Source: Octopus sinensis
Taxonomy: Eukaryota
Direction of reading: 5' to 3'
DNA length: 64,000 bases
Assembly: GCF_006345805.1 (NCBI RefSeq)
Contig: NC_043009.1
Coordinates: 60,388,001 to 60,452,000, forward strand
Part shown: positions 1 to 51,310 of the stretch, one piece after another
How positions within the stretch are numbered: the stretch's first letter is position 1
How the letters are laid out: the number at the start of each line of letters is the position of its first letter
Program-made: the position numbers and the translations under genes
The notes under the pieces: model-generated
The model's input: only the letters and a program-made list of their open reading frames with translations
Told to the model about the DNA's origin: nothing
The model's database searches: none

Positions 1-17
1 ATTCTTTTAGTAGATAT

Positions 18-57
<40 letters not shown>

Positions 58-233
58 ATAAATATTAGGGAATAAATCCAAATTTACAGGGAAAAAAATC
101 AGATTTAGGATTAAATCCAATTTTATAGTAAAATATTATATAATATTAATTAGAGACAAAACCACTATTTTGCAAAACAAACAAGGAAAGACTTAATCAA
201 TACATAAAATTTTAATAAAAAGTAAAAAAACCG

Positions 234-276
234 CCACTACAATTGTTTCATGTCCTGATCGACAATCTTCAGGTGG
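234..276 (-). ncRNA. Minimal type-I hammerhead ribozyme motif (mirror copy)
   Basis: Minus strand reads ccac CTGAAGA t tgtc gatcag gaca t GAAA caattg TA gtgg. Confidence 0.75.
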
Positions 277-330
277 ATTTCCAATTTTCAAGTCAGTTTC
301 AAATTTGAAACTGACTTGAAAATTGGAAAT

Positions 331-373
331 CCACCTGAAGATTGTCGATCAGGACATGAAACAATTGTAGTGG
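331..373 (+). ncRNA. Minimal type-I hammerhead ribozyme motif (C3:G8 core)
   Basis: ccac/gtgg helix I, CTGAAGA core, tgtc/gaca helix II, GAAA, palindromic CAATTG helix III, GUA cleavage triplet. Confidence 0.8.
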
Positions 374-554
374 CGGTTTTTTTACTTTTTATTAAAATTT
401 TATGTATTGATTAAGTCTTTCCTTGTTTGTTTTGCAAAATAGTGGTTTTGTCTCTAATTAATATTATATATATATATATAGGTACATAAATTCAGGGTGA
501 ATACTTGATAAATGTAGGCACCTGTATATGCCAGCTAGTGGCATAGGTGATAGG

Positions 555-824
555 ATTTATGTATCAAATGAAGTAAATGAAAAACAGGACGCAAAGGATT
601 TTGCGGTACATATGTTTCAGGCTTTATTGAACAACTTATTCTTATATCAATGCATATTGATATAATAGATAGATCAAAAGCCTTCTTCAGCCGCATACAA
701 TTGCTACACCAAAGACTTGTATCACATTATAAAAGGTTTGAACTTTAGAATAAGTTGTTCAATAAAGCCCGAAACATATGTACTGCAAAACCCTTTGCGT
801 CCTGTTTTTCATTTACTTCATTTG

Positions 825-832
<8 letters not shown>
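555..832. repeat. Inverted repeat with spacer; Penelope-like terminal-repeat remnant (family 2)
   Basis: About 555-652 is the reverse complement of about 746-832; contains a hammerhead motif. Confidence 0.7.
603..694 (-). ncRNA. Hammerhead motif with extended helix II
   Basis: Minus strand: gcgg CTGAAGA aggct ... agcct GAAA catatg TA ccgc. Confidence 0.7.
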
Positions 833-878
<46 letters not shown>

Positions 879-904
879 TATATATACTAGTATTATAACC
901 TGAT

Positions 905-1268
905 CTCATTCAGGTCTAATTGAGCCACATTTTAAAAGATAGGAATTTTGCCCTTGAGGCCATGCCTTTCAATTGAGCAAACTCAAAGTTGCCATGCAAA
1001 CTCACCAGCTCTTTAACATAGGTGTGCAAATTTCAGCTCAATCCAACTGTATTTACTAACACTTTTGCCTGCACAACTGCTTGTGTGACAATTCAGGTCT
1101 ACTTGGGCCACATTTTAAAGATCTTGCCCTAGGAGCCATGCCTTTCAATTGAGCAAACTCAAAGTTGCCACGCAAACTCGCCAGCACTTTTAACATAGGT
1201 GTGCAAATTTTCAGGTCAATCTGCAATCCGACCACATTTACTGACACTTTTGCCTGCACAACTGCTTG
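905..1268. repeat. Two-unit tandem repeat of about 180 bp (also 3866-4230)
   Basis: attcaggtct...gccacatttt...gccatgcctttcaattgagcaaactcaaagttgcc...ttttgcctgcacaactgcttg occurs twice in tandem. Confidence 0.8.
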
Positions 1269-1269
1269 G

Positions 1270-1473
1270 AGGGAGAAGCACAGACACACAAATACATACA
1301 TACATACATACATGCATGTATGAGGGGCATCTTTCAGTTTTTATCTACCAAATCCATGCACAAGTCTTTGGTCACCCAAGGCTATACTACAAGCCATTTG
1401 CCTATGGTGCTACACTGTGAGACTCACCAACCAAACCATGTGGTTGAAAGCAAGCTTCTTGCTACACAGCCAC
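1270..1473 (-). mobile_element. tRNA-derived SINE family A, degenerate 5' part (duplicate at about 4232-4434)
   Basis: Reverse-complement similarity to the full copies at 14376 and 20010. Confidence 0.7.
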
Positions 1474-1505
1474 ATATACATGTGCATATATACGTACATG
1501 CATTT

Positions 1506-1887
1506 GGAGGCGCAATGGCCCAGTAATTAGGGCAGCGGATTCGCGGTCATAGGATCATGGTTTCGATTCCCTGACCAGCGCGTTGTGAGTGTTTATTGAG
1601 CGAAAACACCTAAAAAAGCTCCACGAGGCTCCGGCAGGGGGTGGTGGCGATCCCTACTGTACTCTATTACCACAACTTTCACTCACTCTTTCTTCCCATG
1701 TCTGTTGTACCTGTATTTCAAAGGGCCAGCCTTGTCGCACTCTGTGTCACCCTGAATCTCCCCAAGAACTACGTTAAGGGTACACGTGTCTGTGGAGTGC
1801 TCAGCCACTTGCACGTTAATTTCACAAGCAGGCTGTTCTGTTGATCAGATCAACTGGAACCCTCGTCATCGTAAGCGACAGAGTGCC
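1506..1887 (+). mobile_element. tRNA-derived SINE family B (duplicate at 4468-4848)
   Basis: tRNA-like head with A box (TGGCCCAGTAA) and B box (GTTTCGATTCC); homologous to 25534-25917 and 39468-39852. Confidence 0.85.
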
Positions 1888-2121
1888 AACACATACATGT
1901 ATACTATATATACACACACATACATAATGGTGTTTACATAGTGTGCAAGCCCGCTGGGAAAATTTTTATCAAAATCAATTCGCAGAAAACCAAGAAATCC
2001 TAAATTTCACTCCTAAGCTATTAGCATGGTTTTGGGTGTATATTATCAGATATTATTTATTTAGCAAACTATTGTATGCATACATAAACTCATACACATC
2101 TGTACACATATTTATATATAT

Positions 2122-2512
2122 ACTAGCAGTATCACCTAGCGTTGCTCAGGTTTGTTTCAACCCTTTAGAATTGGAATTTTTGAAAAGCAAAATTTTGCAT
2201 TATGTAGCTTGTTATTCTCTTTAAGTGAACAATTTTCTGGTTGAAATACACCGAAAAATGGCGACACAGCAGTCAAAAAATCGTAAAAATAGGGATTTTC
2301 ATAGTAAAAAAAAAGCACCTTTGATGTAAATAATTTTTGGTCTTAACATGGTCCGATTTGAATTTTATCTTCTACAGAATGAAGAGCAAGCCTTCTTCTA
2401 TCATACTCTCAGTTTTGGTCAACTTGCACAGCAGGGTCTCGGAGGAGATAGTATTAGTTGAAAGCTACCAAACCTGCCACACACAGACAACTTCAGCTTT
2501 ATATATATAGAT
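2122..2512 (+). mobile_element. Non-autonomous Helitron-like (Lep1/HINE-like) element (duplicate at 5084-5476)
   Basis: Starts ACTAGCAGTATC..CGTTGCTC.GG, ends ACAGACAACTTCAGCTTTATATATATAGAT; at least seven copies in the window; no TSD. The rolling-circle class is inferred from the terminal architecture. Confidence 0.65.
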
Positions 2513-2596
2513 TTACACACACACACACACACACACTTTATATATTTTATATATGCTTTCATTCCTTACATTTTTTGTTTTGTTTTGGTTTTACAG

Positions 2597-2623
2597 ATGC
2601 TGTTGAAAACGATCCTCCAAATG
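2597..2623 (+). CDS. Micro-exon (27 nt, phase 1-1) of an unidentified host gene; (D)AVENDPPN
   Basis: T-rich tract plus TACAG acceptor, GTATGA donor; homologous flanking introns at 10108; frame is open across the exon chain. Confidence 0.6.
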
Positions 2624-2844
2624 GTATGATTTTTTTTTTTTTTTTACTATTATAACCGTTTCTAATGTTCTCTTTGTTGTTGGTTGTCTGTGAGTCAGCC
2701 TGTATCGAGTAGAGTCATGGTCGAAGACACTGAAACCTTTGCATATTGTATTTTCAGATATTATTTTGGAATCTAATGCTTTATCTCTCATTTTCTTTTA
2801 GATAGTGGTATTATTATAGGGATATTTAGTTACTATTTCTAGCA

Positions 2845-3175
2845 TGGCTCAGTGGTTAGAGTGTCGAGCTTATGATCATGAGGTTGTGAGTTCGAATCCC
2901 GGACCGTGCTGCATGCTGTGTTCTTGAACAAGACACTTTATTTCACGTTGCTCAGTTCATTCAGCTGTAGAAATGAATTGCGATGTCACAGGTGCCAAGT
3001 TGTATCGACCCCTTTGCCTTTCCCCTGGATAACATCAGTGGTGTGGATAGGGGAGACTGGTATGCATGGGTGACTGCTGGTCTTCCATGAAAACAACCTT
3101 GCCCGGACTTGTGCCTGGGAGGGTAACTTTCTAGGTGCAATCCCATGGTCAGTCATGACCAAAGGGGGTCTCAGC
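2845..3175 (+). mobile_element. tRNA-derived SINE family C (duplicate at 5812-6143)
   Basis: A box TGGCTCAGTGG, B box GTTCGAATCC; 10-bp TSD ATTTCTAGCA (2835-2844 and 3176-3185); the empty site is seen in the paralogous intron near 10340-10350. Confidence 0.9.
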
Positions 3176-3311
3176 ATTTCTAGCAAGTTGAATGACTGTG
3201 TAAAGGCTTCTTTAGTGACACATATCCAGAATTTATGTTATATTCTAGCTTCAGGTGGATTTCCAATTTTCAAGTCAGTTTCAAATTTGAACTGACTTGA
3301 AAATTGGAAAT

Positions 3312-3354
3312 CCACCTGAAGATTGTCGATCAGGACATGAAACAATTGTAGTGG
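3312..3354 (+). ncRNA. Hammerhead motif, duplicate of 331-373
   Basis: Identical core and helices within the tandem duplication. Confidence 0.75.
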
Positions 3355-3581
3355 CGGTTTTTTTACTTTTTATTAAATTTTATGTATTGATTAAGTCTTC
3401 CTTGTTTGTTTTGCAAAATAGTGGTTTTGTCTCTAATTAATATTATATATATATATATAGGTACATAAATTCAGGGTGAATACTTGATAAATGTAGGCAC
3501 CTGTATATGCCAGCTAGTGGCATAGGTGATAGGATATATGTATCAAATGAAGTAAATGAAAAACAGGACGCAAAGGATTTT

Positions 3582-3674
3582 GCGGTACATATGTTTCAGG
3601 CTTTATTGAACAACTTATTCTTATATCAATGCATAATTGATATAATAGATAGATCAAAAGCCTTCTTCAGCCGC
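3582..3674 (-). ncRNA. Hammerhead motif, duplicate of 603-694
   Basis: Same motif within the tandem duplication. Confidence 0.65.
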
Positions 3675-3804
3675 ATACAATTGCTACACCAAAGACTTGT
3701 ATCACATTATAAAAGGTTTGAACTTTAGAATAAGTTGTTCAATAAAGCCCGAAACATATGTACCGCAAAACCCTTTGCGTCCTGTTTTTCATTTACTTCA
3801 TTTG

Positions 3805-3848
<44 letters not shown>

Positions 3849-5564
3849 TAGTATTATAACCTGATCTCATTCAGGTCTAATTGAGCCACATTTTAAAAGA
3901 TAGGAATTTTGCCCTTGAGGCCATGCCTTTCAATTGAGCAAACTCAAAGTTGCCATGCAAACTCACTAGCTCTTTTAACATAGGTGTGCAAATTTCAGCT
4001 CAATCCAACTGTATTTACTAACACTTTTGCCTGCACAACTGCTTGTGTGACAATTCAGGTCTACTTGGGCCACATTTTAAAGATCTTGCCCTAGGAGCCA
4101 TGCCTTTCAATTGAGCAAACTCAAAGTTGCCACGCAAACTCGCCAGCACTTTTAACATAGGTGTGCAAATTTTCAGGTCAATCTGCAATCCGACCACATT
4201 TACTGACACTTTTGCCTGCACAACTGCTTGGAGGGAGAAGCACAGACACACAAATACATACATACATACATACATGCATGTATGAGGGGCATCTTTCAGT
4301 TTTTATCTACCAAATCCATGCACAAGTCTTTGGTCACCCAAGGCTATACTACAAGCCATTTGCCTATGGTGCTACACTGTGAGACTCAACCCAAAACCAT
4401 GTGGTTGGAAAGCAAGCTTCTTGCTACACAGCCACATATACATGTGCATATATACGTACATGCATTTGGAGGCGCAATGGCCCAGTAATTAGGGCAGCGG
4501 ATTCGCGGTCATAGGATCATGGTTTCGATTCCCTGACCAGGCGTTGTGAGTGTTTATTGAGCGAAAACACCTAAAAAAGCTCCACGAGGCTCCGGCAGGG
4601 GGTGGTGGCGATCCCTACTGTACTCTATTACCACAACTTTCACTCACTCTTTCTTCCCATGTCTGTTGTACCTGTATTTCAAAGGGCCAGCCTTGTCGCA
4701 CTCTGTGTCACCCTGAATCTCCCCAAGAACTACGTTAAGGGTACACGCGTCTGTGGAGTGCTCAGCCACTTGCACGTTAATTTCACAAGCAGGCTGTTCT
4801 GTTGATCAGATCAACTGGAACCCTCGTCATCGTAAGCGACAGAGTGCCAACACATACATGTATACATATATATACACACACATACATAATGGTGTTTACA
4901 TAGTGTGCAAGCCCGCTGGGAAAATTTTTATCAAAATCAATTCACAGAAAACCAAGAAATCCTAAATTTCACTCCTAAGCTATTAGCATGGTTTTGGGTG
5001 TATATTATCAGATATTATTTATTTAGCAAACTATTGTATGCATACATAAACTCATACACATCTGTACACATATTTATATATATACTAGCAGTATCACCTA
5101 GCGTTGCTCAGGTTTGTTTCAACCCTTTAGAATTGGAATTTTTGAAAAGCAAAAATTTTGCATTATGTAGCTTGTTATTCTCTTTAAGTGAACAATTTTC
5201 TGGTTGAAATACACCGAAAAATGGCGACACAGCAGTCAAAAAATCGTAAAAATAGGGATTTTCATAGTAAAAAAAAGCACCTTTTTGATGTAAATAATTT
5301 TTGGTCTTAACATGGTCCGATTTGAATTTTATCTTCTACAGAATGAAGAGCAAGCCTTCTTCTATCATACTCTCAGTTTTGGTCAACTTGCACAGCAGGG
5401 TCTCGGAGGAGATAGTATTAGTTGAAAGCTACCAAACCTGCCACACACAGACAACTTCAGCTTTATATATATAGATTTACACACACACACACACACACAC
5501 TTTAATATATTTTAATATATGCTTTCATTTCCTTACAATTTTTTGTTTTGTTTTGGTTTTACAG

Positions 5565-5591
5565 ATGCTGTTGAAAACGATCCTCCAAATG
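5565..5591 (+). CDS. Duplicate 27-nt micro-exon DAVENDPPN
   Basis: Identical to 2597-2623 with the same splice sites. Confidence 0.55.
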
Positions 5592-6760
5592 GTATGATTT
5601 TTTTTTTTTTTTACTATTATAACCGTTTCTAATGTTCTCTTTGTTGTTGGTTGTCTGTGAGTCAGCCTGTATCGAGTAGAGTCATGGTCGAAGACACTGA
5701 AACCTTTGCATATTGTATTTTCAGATATTATTTTGGAATCTAATGCTTTATCTCATTTTCTTTTAGATAGTGGTGTATTATTATAGGGATATTTAGTTAC
5801 TATTTCTAGCATGGCTCAGTGGTTAGAGTGTCGAGCTTATGATCATGAGGTTGTGAGTTCGAATCCCGGACCGTGCTGCATGCTGTGTTCTTGAACAAGA
5901 CACTTTATTTCACGTTGCTCCAGTTCATTCAGCTGTAGAAATGAATTGCGATGTCACAGGTGCCAAGTTGTATCGACCCCTTTGCCTTTCCCCTGGATAA
6001 CATCAGTGGTGTGGATAGGGGAGACTGGTATGCATGGGTGACTGCTGGTCTTCCATGAAAACAACCTTGCCCGGACTTGTGCCTGGGAGGGTAACTTTCT
6101 AGGTGCAATCCCATGGTCAGTCATGACCAAAGGGGGTCTCAGCATTTCTAGCAAGTTGAATGACTGTGTAAAGGCTTCTTTAGTGACACATATCCAGAAT
6201 TTATGTTATATTCTAATTTTTATTGCGATAGCAATGGTTTAAGGATTAAATTCTAGCTTTGTTTTATTAAATTTACCTGAACTTCAATATGGAAACTAAA
6301 TTTTAAAATTTATATAGACATATTTAATCATACATTGAATACCTTGGACTACAATATCTGATGTGTCTTCTTTCTTTTAAGTTGATAATTGAACAAATGA
6401 ACTGTTTTACTTCATGTTTATCTTGGAGGGAACAAGGCAGGCATTTTGTAGTTGACTGACCTGCTAAAAATAGCAGCGAAGTATGTTGGATATTATATTC
6501 AATTGCCTTAGGACAGGTCAGATATGTAGGTAGATGTTTTCAAAGATAAGACCTTTAATCACAGGTCTACTCAACCAGGGTCTATGTAGAATTAAACATT
6601 AACCATATTTACCAACTTCAAAGTTCAGGGATATTTAACTTCTCACTTCAAATATCATTTGAAATATATTTTCATTACTCTGAAATTCTGAAATTACTAT
6701 CTTTCTTTGCATATCTACCTTATTTCATTGAGATGTCTTATTTTCTTTTTTATTTATAAG

Positions 6761-6777
6761 TGCTCCACCTTCCCCTT
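6761..6777 (+). CDS. Candidate micro-exon (17 nt from the AAG acceptor, or 45 nt from a GAG acceptor at 6733)
   Basis: GTAAGT donor at 6778 is positionally homologous to the donor at 11539; the acceptor is ambiguous. Confidence 0.35.
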
Positions 6778-7147
6778 GTAAGTTAGAAAATTTACTCCTG
6801 AATAATATGTTACACATAGATTGTCACTATTTCTTATATTCAGCTTTACATGTGAGCCACAACCTTTCAAACACAGACCATATTATTTGGGTCTGGATCA
6901 CATCCTTCAGATGTGAACTGCACTCTTCCAATGTGGTGGGTCACAGTCTCTCAGATGTGGATTGTAGTCTTTAGATGTGGATCAGTCTTTCAATGTGAAC
7001 CACAGTCTTTATATTCCCTTTTCCCTCTGTTCTTTGTAATTTGTAATTTTTTTCTATTTCCAGTATTCACACAATTTTTTTTTAGCTTAATTTGCTTGTA
7101 TACATAACACTGGAACTTTTTATTTTCCTTCTGTCTTTATTCATTAA

Positions 7148-7368
7148 CCCTTTTGTTACCGTATTTCTGTTGAGATGCTCTGTGTTTCTTTCAATTACTT
7201 TAAATATATCAAAGAATTTAGTAAAATAACTTTGTTATCAATCAGCTAGTGTTAGGAACATAAATTGTGACTATGGTTTGGTGGAAGAGTTTAATTTAAA
7301 ACTTATGAAAACAAGACCTTTGTACTACAGAGCCAGAGCTGGTTTCAGCCGGGTTGGTAACGAAAGGG
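7148..7368. mobile_element. piggyBac-type MITE
   Basis: TTAA-CCCTTTTGTTACC ... GGTAACGAAAGGG-TTAA; family copies at 41295, 41547 and 57991. Confidence 0.8.
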
Positions 7369-8194
7369 TTAAGTGTTATTTCCTATTTGCTTCTATCTAA
7401 AAATCAAATGAAATGAACTACTTTTCCCTTCAAACTTTGTTTTTGTGAACTGAACTTCAATGCTTTGAAACTGACCTATTTTCCATTACATTTCTGACAG
7501 TTTCAGCACTGAGTTGCTGAAGCAGAAATATCATTATAGCAAATATTCTCTTCAATATCAATGACTTGTTTGTCAGTTGCTTGACTTTAACCACTTGAGC
7601 AAGTCCCTTAATGGCTGACAATATGTGCATCTCTGATCATGAGCAGGTTTAGTGAGGGAGCATCGCAGCCATTTGTTGGGAGGGATTCTTTGGGGTTTGA
7701 ATAAATATAACAGAAGTAAATGTGAAGTATATTTGCCATCTAAATGTGGCTAACCACTAAGGGTGGATGCTACTGTAGCTTATAGCCCCAGGAGAACATC
7801 TTCTCCGGCTGGCTATTGACACACTTTCTCTGCACTATCGGTATTTGCAAAGGGAAGCCATCCTTCCCATCGTCGACCTGACGTGATACGCATGAACCCG
7901 GGTTTCTGGGTATTTACCCGTCATCAGCACATGACAATCACTGGTCTTCGATGCGAAGGGGTCCCAATGCAAATACATATATCTGTTTTCCAGTGACTTC
8001 AAGATCAGTGACAAACAGAAGTAAAGTTTGACAGAAATATTAGCCATATTTCATAATTTTTAGGGGTAGACAAACAAGAAATAACAGTTGCTACCCAAGG
8101 GTAAAAATTGCCTTAAACATTGTAATGCATTCCCTTTTCCATGTGTTGTCATCAATTGCAAAGCTAATTAATTTTTTTGCTTTTATTTTTTTAG

Positions 8195-8209
8195 ATCGAA
8201 GCATTTTGT
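8195..8209 (+). CDS. Micro-exon (15 nt, phase 1-1); (D)RSIL
   Basis: Long T tract plus TTAG acceptor, GTAAGT donor; length is a multiple of 3. Confidence 0.55.
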
Positions 8210-10107
8210 GTAAGTTTCAATTTATTCCATTGAGTGTTTATGCCTGTTATGTGTTGAGACTGTGTATGTACATTGTGATTGTGTATGTATTTGTGTTGTC
8301 AGTATTATATAGTTGTTGTGTTTGTGTATTGTGACAATATGTATTTGTGTTGTTTGCTGTGAGTGTTTGTTAATATTTGTATATCTCGCATGAGTATATA
8401 TCCCTTATTACATGAATATGTATCCTCTTTGTCACTCTCACATAAACACACACACACACACACACATGCATGCATGCATTTATTCATGATCCTGCAACCA
8501 TGCAACAGGTTATACTGGATTTCATGTTACCAGTAGCACTCTTGAAAGACCTCACAAGTGGTGAGAATGGGTATTAAAAATATCCTTATCTGCTGATAAT
8601 TTTGTAATTCTCCTAGAAAAACTTTTAACTACTGCTTTTAACACATTATTGGGGTGATTTGATAATTTGCTCACGTATCTTGTAACTTCACCTGGTTTCC
8701 TATAAGGGTGGTATAATCCTGAGCTAATGTCTAAAGTAGTATCTAAAAAATTTACTACCTTTGTGCCATATTCATATGTAATGCCTAAGTTGAAGCTTTT
8801 AAAAAATTTTCAAATTCTTTTTCTCATTCTTTCCATGACTGATTTGTTGTTGCTAGTGATTAAGCTATTTATTCCTTTTATGGTGTTCTACCCTACCTGA
8901 TCATATTATTTTTATAATAGCCTTTATGAAATTTAACCTAATTTTTGTACCCCTAAATATTTATATTAGTTATATATAACAGCACCAGTAGCTTTACAAC
9001 TTATAATATACCTCTTAGATTATAATTAATATATAGTTAGCGTGTTCTATTGCCCCAGTGTTTCTTTATTAAATGCCAGTGATCAATCTTCATAGATACC
9101 ATCTAATAAGTAAATATTTAAGTATATGAATAAATATTAAGCTAATTTTATGTAATTTCTTTTCTCCCCTATTGTTGTAAATTTTGGTATATACTCAAAA
9201 GTATTCAAAAATTAATCCTTTTGGTTGTAATTTTCTTAATATTTTTCTTGATAACCCTAACTTCTATCTTTATAGAATATAACAATATTGTTTAAATCAT
9301 TCAACTATAGTACCCATGATAAAATTTCCCCTATATTATCATCATTGGTTTTATTAGAGTCTTGCCCCTTTAACTGGTAACTAACATCTTGATTTAAGAT
9401 CTTCCTTTACCAAACCTCATTATAGACAGTTACTTTATACTACTTGACAAGTTTTATGACTATACCCACTATGATTCTGTCAACTCACTCAGGCCCTTTC
9501 CTACTGGACAATGCTCTTTGATCTTAGATTTTGATATGGAAAGATTTGATAAACAAGACTATAAATTGAAACTGACCCAAAAATCAGTGACAAGCTAGAT
9601 CTCTAGCAAGTTTTTTTCCTGATGTCTTAGTGGCTTCTAAATTGAAGTGAATACAGCATGGACTTTGTCTTCTTACCATCTTAGAGGATGTAGGTAAAAT
9701 TGTACAAATGTGTCCAACTGATTAAATTAATTCTATTTATTTGTGCAGCTGAGGATAGCTCTGCATTTAAATTGATGTAATGATTGCATTGTTCAATGAA
9801 ATGGAGCCGCTTGAAACAATTGTCCTGCATCACCCCTGGATATCCTGTGGCTTATTTTGATTTTATTCACCTTATTTTGAAACATATATGTATATATTTA
9901 TGATATGTACACATACATAGATTCATATACATTCATACATGTGTATACATACATTTACATGCACACTGACACTTTCATATGCTGCTGCACATACCAAAAT
10001 CCATATATGGACATACATGTATTCATTCTTATCTCTCGTCCCTTCATTAGAACTGATTACACAATTATATTTTCATTTTCTCACGATTTTTTTTTTTCTT
10101 TTTGCAG

Positions 10108-10134
10108 ATGCAGATGAACACGAACATTTACCTC
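10108..10134 (+). CDS. Micro-exon (27 nt, phase 1-1); (Y)ADEHEHLP
   Basis: T tract plus TGCAG acceptor, GTATGA donor; paralogous to the 2597/5565 exon. Confidence 0.6.
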
Positions 10135-10944
10135 GTATGAATTTATTTTATTATTATTATTATCCCTTTCTAATTTTCTCTTTGTTGTTGTTTTGTTGCA
10201 GGTCTGCCCTAATCAAATAGATTTATGGTTAAAAGCATGCCATCCATATTATATTATCAGACTGTTTATTTAGGAAACATGTCTGTCATTGCTTCTTTTT
10301 TTAGATGGTGGTGTATTATTATAGAGAGATTTGATTACTATTTCTAGCAAGTTGGGTGACTGTGTAAAGCTTCTTTAGTGACACTTCAGCTTTTATTGTG
10401 AATAGTAATGATTTAAGGATTAAATTTTGGCTTTCTTTCATTAAATTTACCTGAACTTCAGTATGAAAGCTAGATTTTTAAATTTATATAGACACATTTA
10501 ATCATCTTAGACATTGGATACCTTGGACTACAATGTTCAATGTGTTTTCTCTTTTAAGATGGTGGGACAGGATTAAGCTGGTCTACAATTTCCATGACAA
10601 CCCAACAAGTTTTCAAATATGTTCGTTTTCACTTAGTCTGAAGGAATTGACTGTTTTTTTACTTCATGTTTATCTAGGAAGGAACAAAGCAGGCGTTTTG
10701 TGGTTGACTGACCCGCTAAATGTAGCAGCAAAATTCGTTGCACATTACATTCAATTGTCTTAGCAAAAAGGACAGAATGGATAATGTAGACCAGGAGTTT
10801 ACTAAGAGAAAGCACTTGATCGTAGGTCTACTCAACCAATTAAACATATTTATCTACTTCATATTTATCTTCCTCTTGCATATCATTTCTAAAACATATT
10901 TTCATTACTCCTCTGAATATTCTGGAATTACTATTTTAATTTGT

Positions 10945-11459
10945 ACTAGCAGTATCGCCCGGCGTTGCTCGGGTTTGTAAGGGAAATAACTATATAAGCA
11001 TTTTTAGAGAGTTACTTCCCTTATAGATGCCAATTCGGGCTTTCTTAGCCATTTCTGTTTTGGTGTCTTCAACCCATGAAGTCGTTGTTCTAAAAGAACG
11101 CTGGTCTCCTTGACAACGCTTTACGACGTTGATTTCCTTACACTCCCTTCCCCACAGCTTCACGAGGGAGGGAAGAAGGGGGAGAAGCAAACAGGTGGAG
11201 GTGTTTGACCATGGACACCAACTCCGCCACCATCGACACACGAAAAATTATGCATTAAAATGGAATAAAAAATGATGTTAAATTATTTTTAAAATCGTAG
11301 ACTCATCGTAGATGCGCGCTAATACTCAGACGGGCTCGATATGAATCACGCCTATAAGATACCCGAATTTGGTTAAACTGCACCGCAAAATGTGGGAGTA
11401 GTTAGGAATCTAAATCGAAGGGGACAGACTCACACAACTACAGTTTTATATATATAGAT
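10945..11459 (+). mobile_element. Helitron-like non-autonomous element, second subfamily
   Basis: Same ACTAGCAGTATCGCCCGGCGTTGCTCGGG start and TATATATAGAT end, different interior; absent from the paralogous intron near 6710. Confidence 0.65.
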
Positions 11460-11511
11460 TTGTATTTTATTTTATTAAGGTAATATATTTAATTTCTTTC
11501 TTTATTTTCAG

Positions 11512-11538
11512 TTTCATCACTATCTGCAGATTCCTATC
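11512..11538 (+). CDS. Micro-exon (27 nt, phase 1-1); (L)SSLSADSY
   Basis: TTTCTTTATTTTCAG acceptor, GTAAGT donor. Confidence 0.6.
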
Positions 11539-11965
11539 GTAAGTGATAAAATTTACTCCAACATAATAAATTACACATAGATGTTCACTATATATTATAT
11601 TCAGCTTTAGGTGTGACTCACAATCGTTCAACACATATCGCATTATTAGAGTCCGGATCACATTCATATGTAGATCACATCCTTCCAATCTTAATTGCAG
11701 TCTTTAGATGTGGATCACAAGCATCGTCTGTAGATCATAGTCGCTGCATGTGGATCAGTCCTTAGATGTGGTTCACAGTCTTTACATGTGGATTTTAGCC
11801 TTCACATGCAAATCACATTATTGAGATGTGGATCACATCGTTCAGGCATGTGTGACATTATCCCACTCTATATCACAGTTTTTAGACGTGGTTTGCAGTC
11901 GTTAGATGCTAATCATTGTATTTTGGTCTGGATTCGGTTCTTCAGATACATATCACAGTCTTTAA

Positions 11966-12185
11966 CCCTTTAGTATTCAAACTGGCCATATCTGGCCAAA
12001 ATATTTTATTCTGTTTTATGTTCAAACTGACCAGATCCAGGCTCTCACACCTACCCTACAATGTTATTCTACATTAAGTAATTACACAATCAACATCTTG
12101 AAGATATGAGATAATGCATGATTAATTCAAATCAATGGGAATCAATAAGCATTATGTTTGAAAGAATAATCAGAACACTAAAGGG
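11966..12185. mobile_element. piggyBac-type MITE, second family
   Basis: TTAA-CCCTTTAG ... CTAAAGGG-TTAG termini. Confidence 0.6.
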
Positions 12186-12524
12186 TTAGATGTAGATGAC
12201 ATGTGAAGCACACTTATTAGACACAGATCACATTAGTGAGATGTGAATCAAGTATGAATTGCAGTCTTTAGGTGTGAGTCATTGTCTTTCAATGTGAATC
12301 ACATTATTTAGATAATAATCACATTCTTCACTTATGTATCACATTCTTCAGATATGTACCACAGTCTTTAGATGCAGATCACACTATTGAGATGTGGATC
12401 ACATTCTTTTGATGCGGATTGCTTGTGTTAGATGCAGAGCACTTTATTTCAATCAGTATCTCCTTCTTTAGATGTAGGTCATATTTTTTAGATGCAGATC
12501 ATGTTATTCAGATATGAATCAAGA

Positions 12525-12855
12525 CCCCTGGACTGGAGATACGTAAAAAGCACTATCCGAATCGTGGCCGAAGCCAGTGCCGCCTCGACTGGCTTCCGTG
12601 CAGGTGGCACGTAAAATGCACCAATCCGACCGTGGCCGATGCCAGCCTCGCCTGGCACCAGTGCAGGTGGCACGTAAAAAGCACCCACTACACTCATGGA
12701 GTGGTTGGCGTTAGGAAGGGCATCAAGCTGTAGAAACATTGCCAGATAAGACCGGAGCCTGGTGCAGCCTTCTGGCTTCCCAGATCCCCGGTCGAACCGT
12801 CCAACCCATGCTAGCATGGAGAACGGACGTTAAATGATGATGATGATGATGATGG
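12525..12855 (+). mobile_element. 5'-truncated RTE LINE 3' end with (GAT)n tail (further copies at 13915-14345 minus, 18462-18633, 42385-42882, 46795-46975, 54668-55012, 55190-55515)
   Basis: Same sequence as the 3' UTR of the RTE at 26318-27000, ending AACGGACGTTAAA(TGA)n. Confidence 0.85.
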
Positions 12856-13706
12856 ATCACAGTCTTTAGATGTGGATTACATCCTTGGAAGTGGATCATA
12901 GTTTTTAGATGTATATCATATTTAGAAATGGATTACATTCTTCAGATATGCATTACACACTTTAGGTGTTGATCACAGTCCTTAGATATTGATCACAATC
13001 TTCAGATATGAATCACAATCCTTAAATGTGGTTTGCAGTCTTTAAATATGGAGCACAATCTTCAAATGTGAATCACAGTTTGTAGATGCAAATCACATTA
13101 TTTAGATTTGGAAAACAAGCTTTTGATGTTGATCACATTATTTAGGCCTAGATCACCTTCTACAGATAAGTGTCACAAGATGTAGATGTGGAGCTGGTGA
13201 TATCCCTCCTGGTTTAGGAGTGACTTGGTTTTAAGCAAGAGGAGCCAAGGCCAGAAATTTCTCAAATATAACCATCATTCAGTTGATCTTGTGTTTTCAT
13301 CAATTTAGAAGCTTCACCCAAAATTATTCTACAGCAATATTAAATATGTTTTAAACAACTTAAAACCATGGCAACTGAAGAAGGGGTTTTTTCCTTGTGT
13401 TAATTGTCCTGTACTCTATTTTTTTGTTGTTTAAGAAAAATGTCCAGTTCCTTGGGTTTGTGTCTATGTTTTCGTTTCTCATTGTGTTCGACGTTTTTTT
13501 GGTGTCCTGTACTCATATATGCGTGTATATATACATGTAGAGGTAGGTACGTACATATATGTATATATATATATGCATATGTTTTATTTATTAATATATA
13601 TATAATTAATCATGGATAGAATGAATTCTGTCTACTGCCTGTTATTGTAAATGAGTGTTTATATTTTATTTCTCATTTCTTTCTTTTTTTTCCTTTTTTT
13701 TTACAG

Positions 13707-13719
13707 AAGACTTAAACAA
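13707..13719 (+). CDS. Micro-exon (13 nt, phase 1-2); (Q)DLN
   Basis: Very long T tract plus TACAG acceptor, GTAAGT donor. Confidence 0.55.
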
Positions 13720-13752
13720 GTAAGTTGTTAATTCATTATCTCTCTCTCTTTC

Positions 13753-13791
<39 letters not shown>

Positions 13792-14375
13792 GGAATAGTC
13801 TTCTTAACAATCTTGTATAAATTATTAATCCTCACTATGCTGGTGGAATTTTTACTAGTAATGTAACGTGCTAACCACATGCAAATCAGTTCTCAGGATC
13901 TCTTTCTATTGGTCATCCTCATCATCATCGTTTAACGTCCGCTTCCCATGCTAGCATGGGTCGGATGGTTTGACTGAGGGCTGGCAAACCAGATGGCTGC
14001 ACGAGGCTTCAATCTTGATCTGGCAGAGTTTCTACAGCTGGATGCCCTTCCTACCGCCAACCACTCCGAGAGTGTAGTGGGTGCTTTTACGTGCCACCAG
14101 CACGGGGTCAGTCAGGCAGTACTGGCAACAACCTCAATCGAATCTTATACACATGCCACCGGCACAGAGGCCAGTAAGGCAATGCTGGTTACGATCACGC
14201 TTGAATGGTGTCTTTTACGTGCCACTGGCATGGAGGCCAGATAGCCGCTCTGGCAATGATCATGCTCGGATGGTGCTCTTAATACCCTACTAGCACGGGG
14301 CTCAAGTGCCTGTAAGACGACACTGGTAACGATCACACTCAAATGCTGAAAATAGAATATAAATGCTACATCACA

Positions 14376-14783
14376 GGCGCAGGAGTGGCTGTGTGGTAAG
14401 TAGCTTGCTAACCAACCACATGGTTCTGGGTTCAGTCCCACTGCGTGGCATCTTGGGCAAGTGTCTTCTGCTATAGCCTCGGGTCGATCAAAGCCTTGTG
14501 AGTGGATTTGGTAGACGGAAACTGAAAGAAGCCCGTCGTATATATGTATATATATATGTATATATATGCGTGTGTGTGTGTCTGTGTTTGTCCCCCTAGC
14601 ATTGCTTGACAACCGATGCTGGTATGTTTAAGTCTTCGTTACTTAGTGGTTCGGCAAAAGAGACCGATAGAATAAGTACTGGGCTTACAAAAGAATAAGT
14701 CCCAGGGTCGAGTTGCTCGATTAAAGGAGGTGCTCCAGCATGGCCACAGTCAAATGACTGAAACAAGTAAAAGAGTAAAAGAG
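14376..14783 (+). mobile_element. tRNA-derived SINE family A, full length (other copies at 20010-20393 +, 20795-21148 -, 23766-24740 + split by an LTR, 24757-25230 -, 34665-35330 +, 46560-46775 +, 59186-59563 +)
   Basis: Head GGCGCAGGAGTGGCTGTGTGGTAAG...GGTTCAGTCCCA, internal (TA)n/(TG)n, tail ending (GTAAAAGA)n. Confidence 0.9.
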
Positions 14784-15065
14784 GGAGAGTATAAGCATCC
14801 ACATACTTGCATGTGAAGGTGCATAGCTTAGTGGATAGTTTTATTTGGCTCATGACTGTAAGGGAGTGACACCAAAATATTTCCTCAAAAATTAATTTCA
14901 TCTCTAAATCCAAGCTTTGTCTTATAGCTTGTTTCAGTCACTGGATCGTGGCCATGCTGGAGCACTGCTTTGAAGAGATCTTTTTTTTTTGTTGTTGTTG
15001 TTTTGTTTTGTTTTTATTATTATGAATATGTATCAATTTTATTTTTTCATTTTTTTTTTTTACAG

Positions 15066-15084
15066 TATGGAAATGAATATTTAA
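15066..15084 (+). CDS. Putative terminal coding exon; (N)MEMNI*
   Basis: T tract plus TACAG acceptor; phase 2 matches the preceding 13-nt exon; TAA at 15082-15084. Confidence 0.5.
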
Positions 15085-15429
15085 GCCACTGCACAGTCCA
15101 TTTCTCATTTTAACTCAAGCGAAAACCTTAAGTGCCTGCTCTACATGCTGATCTCCAATGGACACTGAAAAACTGACTGTGATAATCTTTCTAATAATGA
15201 CTTTTAGGGACCCATTATTTCGTTATGCAACTATAAACGTTTTTTTTTTTTTTTTTTTAAATATGCTAAACATTTTTTATAAGACAATTCTGTGTTCCAC
15301 TGTGTTAGCTGTGCTATTATATCACTTGATAAGATTTTGCATTTATGAGCATATATCTATCTTTGTGTCAAGTGAGGATGTACTCAATCTGGCTGGCGTC
15401 CCCCCACCCCAGATTGATGAGTAGTCAGA

Positions 15430-18192
15430 CAGTTGACAGGATTTCTGAAGGTGGTGTTGCAGACTAATAAACCACGAGCATCGCAGAACCCCAGCATCTT
15501 TGTCCCCTCCTCATTTCTGGAGCTAAAGCCATAGTCGCCATGCACATGTAGATGTGTGTTGTGTCCAAGACGTATGATGGCGGAGAGCCTCAGCTAGACT
15601 GCAAAGGGCATAGACACAAATTTTTCTGGGTAGGCAACAATAATGTGACATAGGTGTGCTACTAGCAGTGAAATGAGTGGGTAAGGTGATTGAGCTAGTC
15701 AGGGTAAGTGATCAGATTATTAAAGCTTAGAATAACCTTGTTTGATGTAACTGCATCAGTTATCTCTGCGTATGTATCATATGCCTCGTAGATACTCAGA
15801 AGGACCACTTCTATGAATCTCTTCTGAGGACTACCTCAATGATGAAAAATGACTGCATTTTCATCATGGCTAAGGGACTTTAATGAACATGTTGGAAAAT
15901 ACTCTGATGGATTTTAGGGTGTGCATGGCGACTATGGCTTTAGCTCCAGAAATGAGGAGGGGACAAAGATGTTGGGGTTCTGCAATGCTTATGGTTTATT
16001 AGTCTGCAACACCACCTTCAGAAAACCTGTCAACTGTCTGATTACTCATTAATCTGGTGGACACGCCAGCCAGATTGAGTACATCCTCACTTGACACAAA
16101 GATAGATATATCCTTAAATCTTTAAAAATGTTTTAGGCCGCGGCCATGCTGGGGCACCACATAAATGCAAAATCTTTCCCAGGAGAATAATGTACAATGC
16201 AACGTAAGATGTTAATGACTTCAGGCTTAGGGCCAGAAAGATGCAGATGTGCAAGCCAATATGGAAAAAGAAGCTCTGGAAGGTCAAAGATCCTTCAAAT
16301 GGATAGTTTTAGAGATGTCCTCAATAAGGCCTATGATGAGGAGGGAGAGATAGAGACACAAGATGTAGAGAACAACAGGACGTTTCTATGGGACAATCTA
16401 CTAAGGGCAGCAGACCAAATTTATGGCTGGAGCAAAGCCTCTACTAGACCAAGGGTGATATGGTGGTGGAACAGTGAGGTTGACAGGGTCCATAAAAGGG
16501 AAGAGACAGGTCTGGAAAGAATGGAAAAAAACAGGAGCAGAGAATAATATCAGAAAGCTAAAAGGGAAGCTAGATGTCAGTTCTATCTAGATAGAATAGA
16601 AGCAGAAGAGAAGAGCTTTGCCAAAGTCTTACAGCATGACAATTGGAGACTTGAAGTGTTCCAGATTGCTAGAGTATGTGAGTGAGGATTGAGATATTGT
16701 AGAAGAGAAGTGTGTGTGGGTAGATAAGTATGCTTGCACTTAGTGATATGAACAGGAAAGGAGTGTAGAAGAGTTACTGTGCAAGACTGTTGAATCTAGA
16801 GAATAGATAGGCTAAAGGGAGTTTCCCTTGTGTGAACCCAACAGAGGGACTGTCTATGCTAGTGGACAGCAGTGGCAATTAAAACCATAAAGACCAGGAA
16901 AACCCCTGGTCCATCTGGAATCACTGCTGAGATGCTCAAAATATCTGGTAAAGTATTGTAGAGGCCATTCACTCTGCTTGCGAAGACCTGCTGAGGCAAA
17001 TGAAATCGAAATCCGGTAACTGGCATTCATTGATAGTGGAGCACTAAGAGTACCATATGAGTGAGATCGTTGCCAGAGCAACAAGCTGGCCTTCGTGCCG
17101 ATGGCATGTTAAAAACACCATTCGAGCATGATCATTACCTGCATCGCCTTACTAGCACTTGTGCTGGGGGCACGTGAAAAAACATTTGAGCGAGGTCGTT
17201 GCCAGTGCCACTGAACTTGCTCCTGTGCAGGTGGCACGTAAAAAACACCATTTGAGCGTGGCCGTGGCCAGTACCACCTAACTGGCCCTCAGATAGTTTT
17301 CACGTGTACAAGATCCATAAAAACTATAGAGGCATGGGAAATTGATTCTCTCAAATACCCTGGTGGCTCATTAGAGGTAGTAGATAATTTCTGTTACCGA
17401 GGGGACCAAATTAGTAGTGGGGGTAGATTCACGGAGCATATGATTGCTAGAATAAGAATAGGATGAAGAAATTCAGAGAGCTGTTACCTCTGTTGGCCAC
17501 AAAAGGTTTCTCTCTCTAAGTGAAAGGAAGATTGTATGATGTTTGCATATGGACAGCAATTTTACATGATAGTGAGATGTGGGTCCTGAATGCAGGGGAG
17601 ATGTGAAGATTAGAAAGGCATGAGGTTAGTATGCTCATCTGGATGTATGATTTAGGTGTACCTGTTCAATAGAGTGTCAGTGTTTTGAGAGAGAAGATAG
17701 GCATCAAAGGAATTAGCTGCTGGGTGTAAGAAAGAAGACTGCACTGGTTTGGTCATGTGATGCAGATGGATGCCAACAGCTCCATAAAGAAGTGCCGATC
17801 TCTGAAAGTAGATGGAACATGTAGAAGGGAAATGGGATGAAGAATGACCACAGGAGGCTGAACCTTTCAGGTGAGATGACAAAGGACCGCGATGCCTGGC
17901 ACCTTGCTGTTCTCAAGAAGACCTGTACACCACAGAGGGTATTAAGATCAGTCCCTCTGGTGTAAGGCACTCGAGGCAGTGGCATGTAAATGGATCCATA
18001 TGGTGCCACATGAGCACCTGTGAAGTGCCACATAAAAGCACCTGTCCAGTGTCGTGTAAAAGCAGCTCTGTGGCTCCCCGTAAAAGCACTCTGAAACATG
18101 GTTGGCATTAGGAAGGGCATCCAGCTTTTGAAACCATGACGGATCAGACTGGGACCTAGCATGGAAAATGAATGTTAAATGATAATGATGAA
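15430..18192 (+). mobile_element. Old degenerate RTE LINE (endonuclease and RT relics, 3' UTR, GAT tail)
   Basis: GDFNxHVG- and RNEEGT-like endonuclease relics near 15870-16000; RELLPLL- and LHWFGHV-like relics at 17470-17770; many stops and frameshifts. Confidence 0.75.
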
Positions 18193-51155: not shown

Positions 51156-51246
51156 GTATGTATATATATATATATATGTATCTATATATTACATTATATA
51201 TATATTACATACATATTATATATATAACATATATATATATATAGAC

Positions 51247-51310
<64 letters not shown>
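50300..51310. repeat. Long (TA)n-rich microsatellites enclosing a family 1 Penelope-like inverted remnant (50640-50930)
   Basis: About 50725-50810 and 50845-50930 are reverse complements and homologous to 56-230. Confidence 0.85.

What the first reader, a model, noticed from the sequence alone, without database searches (positions are those of the whole stretch)
2597..15084. Micro-exon chain encoding an acidic tail with tyrosine motifs
Seen: exons at 2597, 5565, 8195, 10108, 11512, 13707 and 15066 (27, 27, 15, 27, 27, 13 nt and terminal) each have strong polypyrimidine/AG acceptors and, except the last, GTATGA or GTAAGT donors. They splice into one open frame: (D)AVENDPPN DAVENDPPN DRSIL YADEHEHLP LSSLSADSY QDLN NMEMNI*. 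Five are symmetric phase-1 exons, so each can be skipped independently. One Tyr codon is formed across a junction and a YQDL (YxxL) motif spans another. None of this is visible in the ORF track. Inference: the modular cytoplasmic tail of a receptor-like protein whose 5' part lies upstream of the window, able to generate combinatorial isoforms.
Basis: partly seen in the sequence, partly recalled or inferred. Interest (0 to 1): 0.8.

Follow-up and report, generated by a model that had tools for sequence, protein, structure and literature searches.

The report
Probable micro-exon gene tail, unverified
A string of very short candidate exons on the + strand probably forms the real 3' end of an animal gene and encodes a short acidic tail, but no transcript or related species could be checked, and calling it a receptor tail is a guess.

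Summary
Every letter-level claim checks out: the seven pieces sit at the stated coordinates, have the stated lengths, AG acceptors and GTAAGT/GTATGA donors, and join into the stated peptide.

Four corrections:
- E1 and E2 are copies within a near-identical 2.97-kb tandem duplication, so there are six independent exons.
- The three GTATGA donors are weak.
- E1–E5 are also open in a second frame.
- A permissive chain-builder finds open micro-exon chains of 3–15 exons in every stretch of this window, so openness is not evidence.

Evidence that survives:
- The only three "long pyrimidine tract + GTAAGT within 30 nt" pairs in 128 kb of strand are E3, E5 and E6.
- All frame-carrying lengths are multiples of three.
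- E1/E4 and ψE5/E5 form an old duplicated two-exon module.

Evidence against:
- The exons are no more conserved than introns between paralogues.
- No database protein or spliced sequence matches.
- The 5' part of the gene is outside the window.

Verdict: a likely real coding micro-exon 3' end (about 0.6). The receptor/cytoplasmic reading is untestable here; ITIM and ITAM patterns are absent. This is an ordinary kind of feature.

The parts
2597..2623 (+). Micro-exon E1, 27 nt, phase 1-1, encodes (D)AVENDPPN. CAG acceptor, GTATGA donor.
   Evidence: splice-score rank 50 of 12,033; AG-exclusion zone 84 nt.
5565..5591 (+). Micro-exon E2, an identical copy of E1 made by a very recent 2.97-kb tandem duplication (or an assembly artefact).
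267..6215 (+). Two tandem copies (267-3247 and 3249-6215) of a ~2.97-kb unit, 98.3% identical (8 mismatches, 21 gaps). Each carries one DAVENDPPN exon.
   Evidence: A perfect 334-nt palindrome (137-303 / 304-470) sits at the left boundary.
6761..6777 (+). Decayed paralogue of E5 (psiE5): AAG instead of CAG acceptor, 17 nt (9-nt deletion), GTAAGT donor kept. It would shift the frame if used.
8195..8209 (+). Micro-exon E3, 15 nt, phase 1-1, encodes DRSIL. TAG acceptor with CTAAT branch-point motif at -31 and UGC at -17; GTAAGT donor. Unique sequence in the window.
10108..10134 (+). Micro-exon E4, 27 nt, phase 1-1, encodes (Y)ADEHEHLP. An old paralogue of E1/E2 (block ~73% identical). Best acceptor score of the set (14.1 bits); weak GTATGA donor; UGC at -5.
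11512..11538 (+). Micro-exon E5, 27 nt, phase 1-1, encodes LSSLSADSY. CAG acceptor, GTAAGT donor.
11606..13160 (+). Degenerate 20-nt minisatellite (consensus about TTTAGATGTGGATCACAnTC, ~45 units in three blocks) in intron E5-E6. A remnant of it lies downstream of psiE5 at 6886-6986, so it is part of the old duplicated module.
   Evidence: (22 matches vs 0.39 expected, all on the + strand and only at these two places).
13707..13719 (+). Micro-exon E6, 13 nt, phase 1 to 2, encodes QDLN. 27-nt uninterrupted pyrimidine run, GTAAGT donor. Top-ranked micro-exon candidate of the whole window.
   Evidence: (rank 1 of 12,033).
15066..15084 (+). Start of the terminal exon E7, which finishes NMEMNI and carries the TAA stop. 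Acceptor ranks 9th of 7,479 AGs.
15085..15260 (+). Putative short 3' UTR. Unique sequence, TATAAA at 15232 followed by a run of about 20 T. This is inferred; no canonical AATAAA occurs before the downstream transposon.

Best explanation
The + strand from about 2.6 to 15.3 kb is the 3'-terminal part of a protein-coding gene of a repeat-rich animal genome. Its last exons are micro-exons of 27, (27), 15, 27, 27 and 13 nt, followed by a terminal exon holding six codons and the stop. They are separated by introns of 1.3-2.9 kb.

Exons this short cannot be recognised by exon definition. Here they carry compensating signals: long U-rich polypyrimidine tracts, AG-exclusion zones of 29-88 nt, and perfect GTAAGT donors at three of them.

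Read in phase 1, they encode a 42-51-residue acidic tail (net charge -12 for the 51-residue chain, pI about 4 for the 42-residue chain). It is low in complexity, probably disordered, and forms the C-terminus of the protein.

The array grew by tandem duplication. An old duplication copied a two-exon module, giving E2 + psiE5 + the start of the 20-mer array on one side and E4 + E5 + the 20-mer array on the other. One E5-type copy then decayed. A very recent 2.97-kb duplication produced E1/E2.

Because E1-E5 are multiples of three in the same phase, each can be skipped alone without a frameshift.

Shown: the sequence features, the periodicity and the duplication history. Inferred: that the exons are spliced, that they are translated in phase 1, and that any are alternative. 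Unknown: what the rest of the protein is.
For: - Exact sequence features.
Only 0.05-0.13% of random or AG..GT-bounded pseudo-chains that are open reach this level. The rival phase-0 frame has G at its codon position 1 in only 2 of those 18 cases (table, shifted by one position).
- Strict scan: the only three 'at least 13/16 pyrimidines + YAG, then GTAAGT within 3-30 nt' pairs in 64 kb on both strands are E3, E5 and E6. Expected numbers are 0.49 and 0.19. With GTATGA allowed, E4 is added.
- A-priori splice matrices put all six internal exons in the top 0.8% of 12,033 candidates. E6 ranks first, and the E7 acceptor ranks 9th of 7,479.
- AG-exclusion zones are 29-88 nt against a background median of 10.
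- Pyrimidine content is 0.77-1.0 at -22..-10. PMC4317164 reports a U2AF2-type tract at this position in 96% of constitutive micro-exons.
- All frame-carrying exons are 3n long. E3, E5, E6 and E7 are unique sequence, not repeats.
- E1 and E4 keep exactly 27 nt, the CAG acceptor and the GTATGA donor, while their flanks carry indels.
- The + strand is T-rich (AT skew -0.06 to -0.13) from 2 to 16 kb and not beyond, as expected for the sense strand of introns.
- The exons are less T-rich than their flanks (all seven) and mostly richer in GC (five of seven).
Against:
- The strict scan was designed after seeing the exons.
- The GTATGA donors of E1, E2 and E4 are weak, 1.7-5.2 bits.
- Between paralogues the exons are not better conserved than introns. 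E1 vs E4: exon 63%, flanks 60% and 69%. E5 vs psiE5: exon 56% plus a 9-nt gap, downstream intron 79%, Fisher p=0.04.
- No protein in the 5.8-billion-sequence collection shares the peptide in either frame.
- No spliced junction sequence was found in the metagenome collection. Coverage of this organism is evidently poor.
- There is no canonical AATAAA before the transposon at 15335.
- E1/E2 may be an assembly artefact.
- The 5' exons are not in the window.
Confidence: 0.6

Rival explanations
1. Chance pseudo-exons. The region is T-rich intronic or intergenic DNA in which poly-T tracts followed by AG are common. A handful happen to lie near GTAAGT/GTATGA, and the reader picked those that chain. 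Nothing is spliced or translated.
For: - Open chains of 3-15 micro-exons are found on both strands in every stretch tested.
- The exons are no more conserved than their flanks between paralogues.
- There are no database matches.
- Three donors are weak.
Against: - Codon-position periodicity at about 1e-3 in exactly the frame that stays open to the last exon.
- Three perfect GTAAGT donors next to top-tier acceptors, clustered on one strand within 5.5 kb and nowhere else in 128 kb of strand.
- 3n lengths for every frame-carrying exon.
- E6 is the single best micro-exon candidate in the window, and the E7 acceptor ranks 9th of 7,479.
Confidence: 0.27
2. The exons are real, but the gene is a MEG-like gene and not the tail of a large receptor. 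It would be a small, probably secreted or surface protein whose coding region is built almost wholly from duplicated symmetric micro-exons. These would evolve fast and be shuffled by exon skipping, as in schistosome micro-exon genes.
For: - The architecture matches the published MEG description: very short symmetric exons (6-81 nt, many of 15 nt), introns of 0.1-5 kb, and origin by duplication (10.1101/2023.06.21.545858). Here the exons are 15-27 nt, the introns 1.3-2.9 kb, and the terminal exon holds only six codons.
- The exons diverge at least as fast as the introns between paralogues.
- There is no homologue anywhere, as expected for a fast-evolving lineage-specific gene.
Against: - No signal-peptide exon is visible; the region 5' of E1 in the window is only the duplicated unit.
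- MEGs are described as specific to Schistosomatidae.
- Faster exon divergence rests on one comparison with a dead copy (p=0.04).
- A disordered tail of an ordinary protein explains the same facts.
Confidence: 0.08
3. The sites are used by the spliceosome, but the pieces are not a protein tail. They could be exons of a non-coding or 3'-UTR part of a transcript, frame-switching or poison cassettes, or stepwise (recursive-type) splicing intermediates that help remove a long terminal intron.
For: - Juxtaposed strong 3' and 5' splice sites a few nucleotides apart are what recursive-splicing exons look like (my knowledge, not tested).
- A second frame is open through E1-E5.
- psiE5 (17 nt) or E6 (13 nt) could switch frames.
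- There is no conservation of the coding content between paralogues.
Against: - The codon periodicity is not expected for non-coding exons.
- Lengths of exactly 3n are unnecessary for non-coding pieces.
Confidence: 0.05

Closest known systems
Animal micro-exons (3-27 nt, or up to 51 nt), constitutive and neural/alternative (Li et al. 2015, PMC4317164; Torres-Mendez et al. 2022, PMC8797185)
   Same: - Sizes of 13-27 nt and mostly 3n lengths.
- A U-rich tract at -10 to -20, long AG-exclusion zones and strong donors.
- The encoded segment is acidic and probably disordered, as reported for alternative micro-exons (PMC4317164).
- The intronic flank of E5 is better conserved than the exon, which recalls the conserved flanks of symmetric alternative micro-exons.
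   Different: - Known micro-exons are usually single inserts between normal exons. Here at least five lie in a row and make up the whole visible coding region.
- UGC near the 3' splice site, the SRRM4/eMIC mark, is present only at E3 and E4.
- The downstream GCATG pattern is not strand-specific.
- Inclusion in mRNA and conservation between species are untested.
Schistosome micro-exon genes (MEGs) (10.1101/2023.06.21.545858)
   Same: A run of symmetric micro-exons (6-81 nt, many of 15 nt) separated by introns of up to 5 kb, a terminal exon with few codons, growth by duplication, potential for in-frame skipping, and fast sequence divergence.
   Different: - There is no sequence similarity.
- A signal peptide and the 5' end are not visible.
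- Only the last six or seven exons are seen, so the share of the coding region made of micro-exons is unknown.
Tandem exon duplication arrays (e.g. duplicated cassette or mutually exclusive exons, PMC9741552; troponin T 5' mini-exons and titin PEVK exons, from my own knowledge)
   Same: Homologous neighbouring exons of identical length and phase (E1/E2/E4, each 27 nt, phase 1-1) with conserved splice sites, produced by block duplication that includes the flanking intron.
   Different: - Nothing here indicates mutually exclusive use.
- The duplicated unit is a two-exon module plus a minisatellite.
- One member (psiE5) has decayed.
- The exon sequences are only 63% identical.
Tyrosine-based signalling or sorting motifs in receptor tails (ITIM, ITAM, YxxPhi)
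   Same: One YxxPhi (YQDL) in an acidic context near the C-terminus.
   Different: - The ITIM pattern [SIVL]xYxx[IVL] and the ITAM pattern are both absent.
- No transmembrane segment is known.
- A single YxxPhi is expected by chance about half the time (my inference).

Membership tests
Micro-exons (internal exons of at most 27-51 nt) | Length of at most 27 nt (strict) or 51 nt, bounded by AG and GT | tested here: met
   27, 27, 15, 27, 27 and 13 nt, each with YAG upstream and GT downstream.
Micro-exons (internal exons of at most 27-51 nt) | Compensating strong splice signals: a U2AF2-type pyrimidine tract 10-20 nt upstream and strong splice-site motifs (PMC4317164) | tested here: met
   Pyrimidine fraction 0.77-1.0 at -22..-10. 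AG-exclusion zones 29-88 nt. GTAAGT at E3, E5 and E6. The donors of E1, E2 and E4 are weak.
Micro-exons (internal exons of at most 27-51 nt) | Presence in mature mRNA (junction reads) | not testable with these tools
   No transcript data for this organism. Searches for the spliced junction in the metagenome collection found nothing, and this is uninformative.
Micro-exons (internal exons of at most 27-51 nt) | Conservation of the exon and its splice sites across species | tested here: inconclusive
   No orthologous sequence was available. In the paralogue proxy, splice sites and length are kept between E1 and E4, but exon identity is no higher than flank identity.
SRRM4/eMIC-dependent neural micro-exons | UGC motif close to the 3' splice site | tested here: inconclusive
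   Present at E4 (-5) and E3 (-17). Absent within 40 nt at E1, E2, E5, E6 and E7.
SRRM4/eMIC-dependent neural micro-exons | Long AG-exclusion zone, long polypyrimidine tract, strong branch point (CUAAY) (PMC8797185) | tested here: inconclusive
   AG-exclusion zone and tract: met at all exons. Strict CTRAY in a branch-point position only at E3 (CTAAT, -31); E4 has a CTGAT at -55, at the far edge of its AG-exclusion zone. Looser yTnAy motifs occur everywhere.
SRRM4/eMIC-dependent neural micro-exons | Neuron-specific inclusion | not testable with these tools
   No expression data.
Schistosome-type micro-exon genes (MEG) | Coding region mostly built of symmetric micro-exons separated by introns of 0.1-5 kb | tested here: inconclusive
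   True of the visible 3' part: five symmetric exons and introns of 1346-2941 nt. The rest of the gene is outside the window.
Schistosome-type micro-exon genes (MEG) | N-terminal signal peptide, secreted product | not testable with these tools
   The 5' end is not in the window. No candidate exon was found in 1-2596.
Schistosome-type micro-exon genes (MEG) | Sequence relationship to MEG families; restriction to Schistosomatidae | tested here: not met
   No similar protein in the collection. The window's repeat content does not point to a schistosome.
Receptor cytoplasmic tail with tyrosine motifs | Transmembrane segment or receptor ectodomain upstream in the same protein | not testable with these tools
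   The upstream exons lie outside the window.
Receptor cytoplasmic tail with tyrosine motifs | ITIM ([SIVL]xYxx[IVL]) or ITAM (YxxL/I x6-12 YxxL/I) pattern | tested here: not met
   The regular-expression scan of the peptide finds neither. ILYADE has E at +3, and DSYQDL has D at -2.
Receptor cytoplasmic tail with tyrosine motifs | YxxPhi sorting motif | tested here: met
   One instance, YQDL. It has low information content because it is expected by chance about half the time.

The most novel reading that the evidence does not exclude
A MEG-like gene outside flatworms. This would be a lineage-specific gene of a (putative) cephalopod whose coding region is assembled almost entirely from tandemly duplicated, symmetric, fast-diverging micro-exons. 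Exon skipping could then generate a family of short acidic secreted or surface peptides. In this reading, the exons diverging faster than their introns would be a mark of diversifying selection.
Probability: 0.08. Interest if true: 0.65.

Novelty: new member of a known kind. Interest (0 to 1): 0.3.

Why it matters
If the exons are real, automatic annotation would probably miss this gene end, because no ORF is visible and the exons are 13-27 nt long. It would add a clean example of a protein tail that grows by duplicating a micro-exon module and can vary by in-frame skipping.

The practical lesson for the scan matters more. "Splices into one open frame" is worthless as evidence for micro-exon chains. 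Codon-position periodicity and coincidence statistics of acceptors and donors do discriminate.

The finding does not open a long-standing question. Its value depends on identifying the upstream gene and on transcript evidence.

Tried and rejected
no hits.
- **Database coverage check with the window's 484-aa RT ORF:** many eukaryotic hits, none named as cephalopod. The only 98% hit is on a 2-kb ENA metagenome contig. The negatives above are therefore weak evidence.
- **Exhaustive representative search with the spliced peptide:** I did not pursue this by other means.
- **Spliced E5|E6|E7 junction in the metagenome collection, exact and codon-degenerate:** nothing found.
- **Open-chain statistic as evidence:** rejected after the negative control.
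- **RBFOX reading:** GCATG lies within 300 nt downstream of all five independent internal exons and never upstream (p about 0.006 to 0.001). I rejected it as evidence because the reverse-complement control CATGC gives 5 of 5 too.
- **Nova/PTB reading of the 20-mer minisatellite:** YCAY is enriched only about 2-fold, so it is not pursued.
- **Search for normal-sized exons on the + strand in 1-16.5 kb:** only low-complexity or repeat-derived candidates.
- **Search for more copies of the E1/E4-type or E5-type exons:** none beyond those listed.
- **Repeat-derived exons:** E3, E5, E6 and E7 are unique in the window, and E1/E2/E4 match only each other, so they are not pieces of a dispersed repeat.
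- **Rfam and tRNA scans of the window:** nothing.
- **Other genes in the window to calibrate this genome's splice consensus:** only transposon fragments.
- **Literature on micro-exons in cephalopods:** no relevant paper.


Full report
**1. What is in the sequence**

- E1 2597-2623 and E2 5565-5591 are 27 nt each, with a CAG acceptor and a GTATGA donor.
- E3 8195-8209 is 15 nt, with TAG and GTAAGT.
- E4 10108-10134 is 27 nt, with CAG and GTATGA.
- E5 11512-11538 is 27 nt, with CAG and GTAAGT.
- E6 13707-13719 is 13 nt, with CAG and GTAAGT.
- E7 starts at 15066 and reaches TAA at 15082-15084.

Joined in phase 1, they read (D)AVENDPPN DAVENDPPN DRSIL YADEHEHLP LSSLSADSY QDLN NMEMNI*. The Tyr across E3|E4 and YQDL across E5|E6 are as described. 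The introns are 1346-2941 nt.

**2. Corrections to the observation**

- E1 and E2 are the same exon twice. They lie in a tandem duplication, 267-3247 vs 3249-6215, that is 98.3% identical with only 8 mismatches. A perfect 334-nt palindrome (137-303 / 304-470, 100% complementary, no spacer) sits at its left boundary. The duplication is either very recent or an assembly artefact.
- GTATGA is a weak donor on a generic metazoan matrix, at 1.7-5.2 bits, against 4.4-8.7 bits for the three GTAAGT donors.
- E1-E5 are open in two frames. Phase 0 reads MLLKTILQM MLLKTILQM IEAFC MQMNTNIYL FHHYLQIPI KT*, with the stop inside E6.
- Skipping any single exon keeps the frame, but E3 joined directly to E6 gives a TAA (read from the sequence).

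**3. Is it more than chance?**

Using all AG..GT micro-exon candidates of at least 12 bits, a simple chain-builder finds open chains of 3-15 exons in every 13-kb stretch on both strands. Three other lines do hold.

(a) Codon periodicity. Without the paralogue E4 the count is 9 of 14 (P 0.017). Pseudo-chains of the same lengths were taken from the introns, from the whole window, or from AG..GT-bounded pieces, and were conditioned to be open. They reach this level in 0.05-0.13% of cases.

(b) Signal coincidence. Only three places in the 64 kb, on either strand, have a strong pyrimidine tract + YAG followed within 30 nt by GTAAGT. They are E3, E5 and E6, where 0.49 + 0.19 would be expected. I chose this rule after seeing the exons. 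With matrices chosen beforehand, the exons rank 1 (E6), 15 (E4), 16 (E5), 49/50 (E1/E2) and 97 (E3) of 12,033 candidates, and the E7 acceptor ranks 9th of 7,479 AGs.

(c) Every exon that must carry the frame is 3n long. All acceptors have AG-exclusion zones of 29-88 nt against a background median of 10. The pyrimidine fraction at -22..-10 is 0.77-1.0, and PMC4317164 reports a U2AF2-type tract at this position in 96% of constitutive micro-exons.

The + strand is T-rich from 2 to 16 kb only, which fits a transcribed sense strand that ends near 16 kb.

**4. History of the array**

- The block around E4 (10066-10500) is an old paralogue, about 73% identical, of the block around E1/E2. Both exons are exactly 27 nt and keep CAG and GTATGA, while the flanks have indels.
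- Sequence starting exactly at the E5 donor (11539-11660) is about 80% identical to 6778-6900. In front of the latter lies a decayed exon (6761-6777): AAG acceptor, 9-nt deletion, 17 nt long, GTAAGT kept.
- A degenerate 20-nt minisatellite follows both copies. It occurs nowhere else in the window (22 matches vs 0.39 expected) and only on the + strand.
- So a module of [27-nt exon, 1.2-1.4 kb of intron, 27-nt exon, minisatellite] was duplicated long ago. One E5-type copy died, and much later the E1 unit was duplicated again.
- E3, E5, E6 and E7 are unique sequence. None of the exons is part of a dispersed repeat.

**5. Evidence against**

The only comparison I could make is between paralogues, and there the exons are not better conserved. 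E1 vs E4: exon 63%, flanks 60% and 69%, not significant. E5 vs psiE5: exon 56% plus a gap, downstream intron 79%, p=0.04. This is a poor proxy for orthologues, because one copy is dead and duplicated exons of a disordered tail may diverge freely. It still gives no support.
- Neither frame has a relative in the protein collection.
- The spliced junction, exact or codon-degenerate, is absent from the metagenome collection. The organism is barely represented in these resources, so these negatives are weak.
- No canonical AATAAA precedes the inverted-repeat element at 15335-16127. TATAAA at 15232 followed by a run of about 20 T is the only candidate poly(A) signal.

**6. What it most likely is**

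It is most likely the 3' end of a + strand protein-coding gene whose C-terminal 42-51 residues are encoded by a run of micro-exons. These would be recognised through unusually strong pyrimidine tracts and donors. The tail is acidic (pI about 4 for the 42-residue chain, net charge -12 for the 51-residue chain) and low in complexity. I put this at about 0.6. The rivals are chance pseudo-exons at about 0.27, a MEG-like micro-exon gene at about 0.08, and spliced but non-coding pieces at about 0.05.

Whether the exons are alternative is open.
- Strong signals are more typical of constitutive micro-exons (PMC4317164).
- Of the SRRM4/eMIC marks (PMC8797185), the AG-exclusion zones and long tracts are present, but UGC near the 3' splice site occurs only at E3 and E4.
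- A GCATG (RBFOX core) lies within 300 nt downstream of every independent internal exon and never upstream. The reverse-complement control behaves the same way, so I do not count this.

**7. The receptor-tail reading**

Nothing in the window bears on it. The peptide has one YxxPhi motif and no ITIM, ITAM, NPxY, dileucine or dibasic motif. No transmembrane or domain-encoding exon is visible on the + strand in 1-16.5 kb. The reading is not excluded, but it is not supported.

**8. Comparison with known systems, and novelty**

The closest known kinds are animal micro-exons, schistosome micro-exon genes and tandem exon duplication arrays. If real, this is a new member of a known kind. A run of five or more consecutive micro-exons forming the whole visible coding region is unusual but not unprecedented. 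I could not confirm that the organism is a cephalopod. The window is repeat-rich animal DNA with RT, zf-RVT and Mos1-type transposase fragments, and Rfam and tRNA scans found nothing.

Noticed in passing
window 137-470, with a truncated copy at 3249-3454: A perfect 334-nt palindrome (arms 137-303 and 304-470, 100% complementary, no spacer) lies exactly at the left boundary of the 2.97-kb tandem duplication. The second copy keeps only 37 nt of the left arm. This is either a palindrome-mediated duplication or foldback element, or a long-read assembly artefact. It casts doubt on whether E1/E2 are really two exons.
   Followed up: partly
window 11606-13160 and 6886-6986, + strand: A locus-specific degenerate 20-nt minisatellite (about TTTAGATGTGGATCACAnTC, ~45 units in three blocks split by SINE-like insertions). 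It starts ~70 nt after the E5 donor, and a remnant lies after psiE5. Each unit carries a YAG-like and a UCAC motif. YCAY density is only about twice the background. Its function, if any, is unknown.
   Followed up: partly
window 6761-6777: A decayed paralogue of exon E5 (AAG acceptor, 17 nt, intact GTAAGT donor). If it were ever used, it would shift the reading into the second open frame (IEAFC MQMNTNIYL FHHYLQIPI KT*), which ends in E6.
   Followed up: partly
window 15335-16127: A ~790-nt element bounded by long inverted repeats (15409-15546 / 15920-16057 at 95%; 15335-15399 / 16063-16127 at 89%) begins about 250 nt after the putative stop codon. The only AATAAA near the gene end (15466) lies inside it.
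   Followed up: partly
window 36479-37933, + strand: An intact 484-aa ORF, the C-terminal part of a non-LTR retrotransposon protein (its relatives carry RVT_1 and zf-RVT). The closest database relative is 98% identical and sits on a 2-kb contig of an ENA metagenome assembly (ERZ22666216). The next best hits are 60-66% identical, and the few named ones come from a shrimp, a fish and cnidarians. The host species itself seems absent from the protein collection.
   Followed up: partly
window 47139-48175, - strand: Remnants of a Mos1/mariner-type transposase (HTH_48 and Transposase_1 domains) split over several ORFs, so the copy is broken.
   Followed up: partly
window 12541-12685, 17079-17249, 26376-27002, 42370-42708, 51216-52351, 54393-54969 (both strands): A short GC-rich repeat containing ...GTGCAGGTGGCACGTAAAA.GCACC..., often in tandem (63-nt period at 12541-12685). 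It produces long spurious ORFs with repeating 'GAFTCHRHGGQARLA'-like peptides. It is probably a SINE or satellite family of this genome.
   Followed up: no
window 2400-2516, 5364-5480, 11424-11465; copies at 38658-38769 (-), 53611-53729 and 56280-56396: The 3' end of one dispersed repeat family, followed by (CA)n/(TA)n, lies 50-85 nt upstream of the acceptors of E1, E2 and E5. These insertions are unusually close to putative functional 3' splice sites.
   Followed up: no
window 1-16500, + strand: GCATG occurs within 300 nt downstream of each of E1, E3, E4, E5 and E6 and never within 300 nt upstream (random-position p about 0.001-0.006). The reverse-complement motif shows the same pattern, so this is a composition effect or a palindromic GCATGC effect and not clear RBFOX sites.
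   Followed up: yes
window ~16000: The AT skew of the + strand changes from T-rich (2-16 kb) to A-rich or mixed beyond 16 kb. This is consistent with the end of a + strand transcription unit near the putative terminal exon.
   Followed up: no
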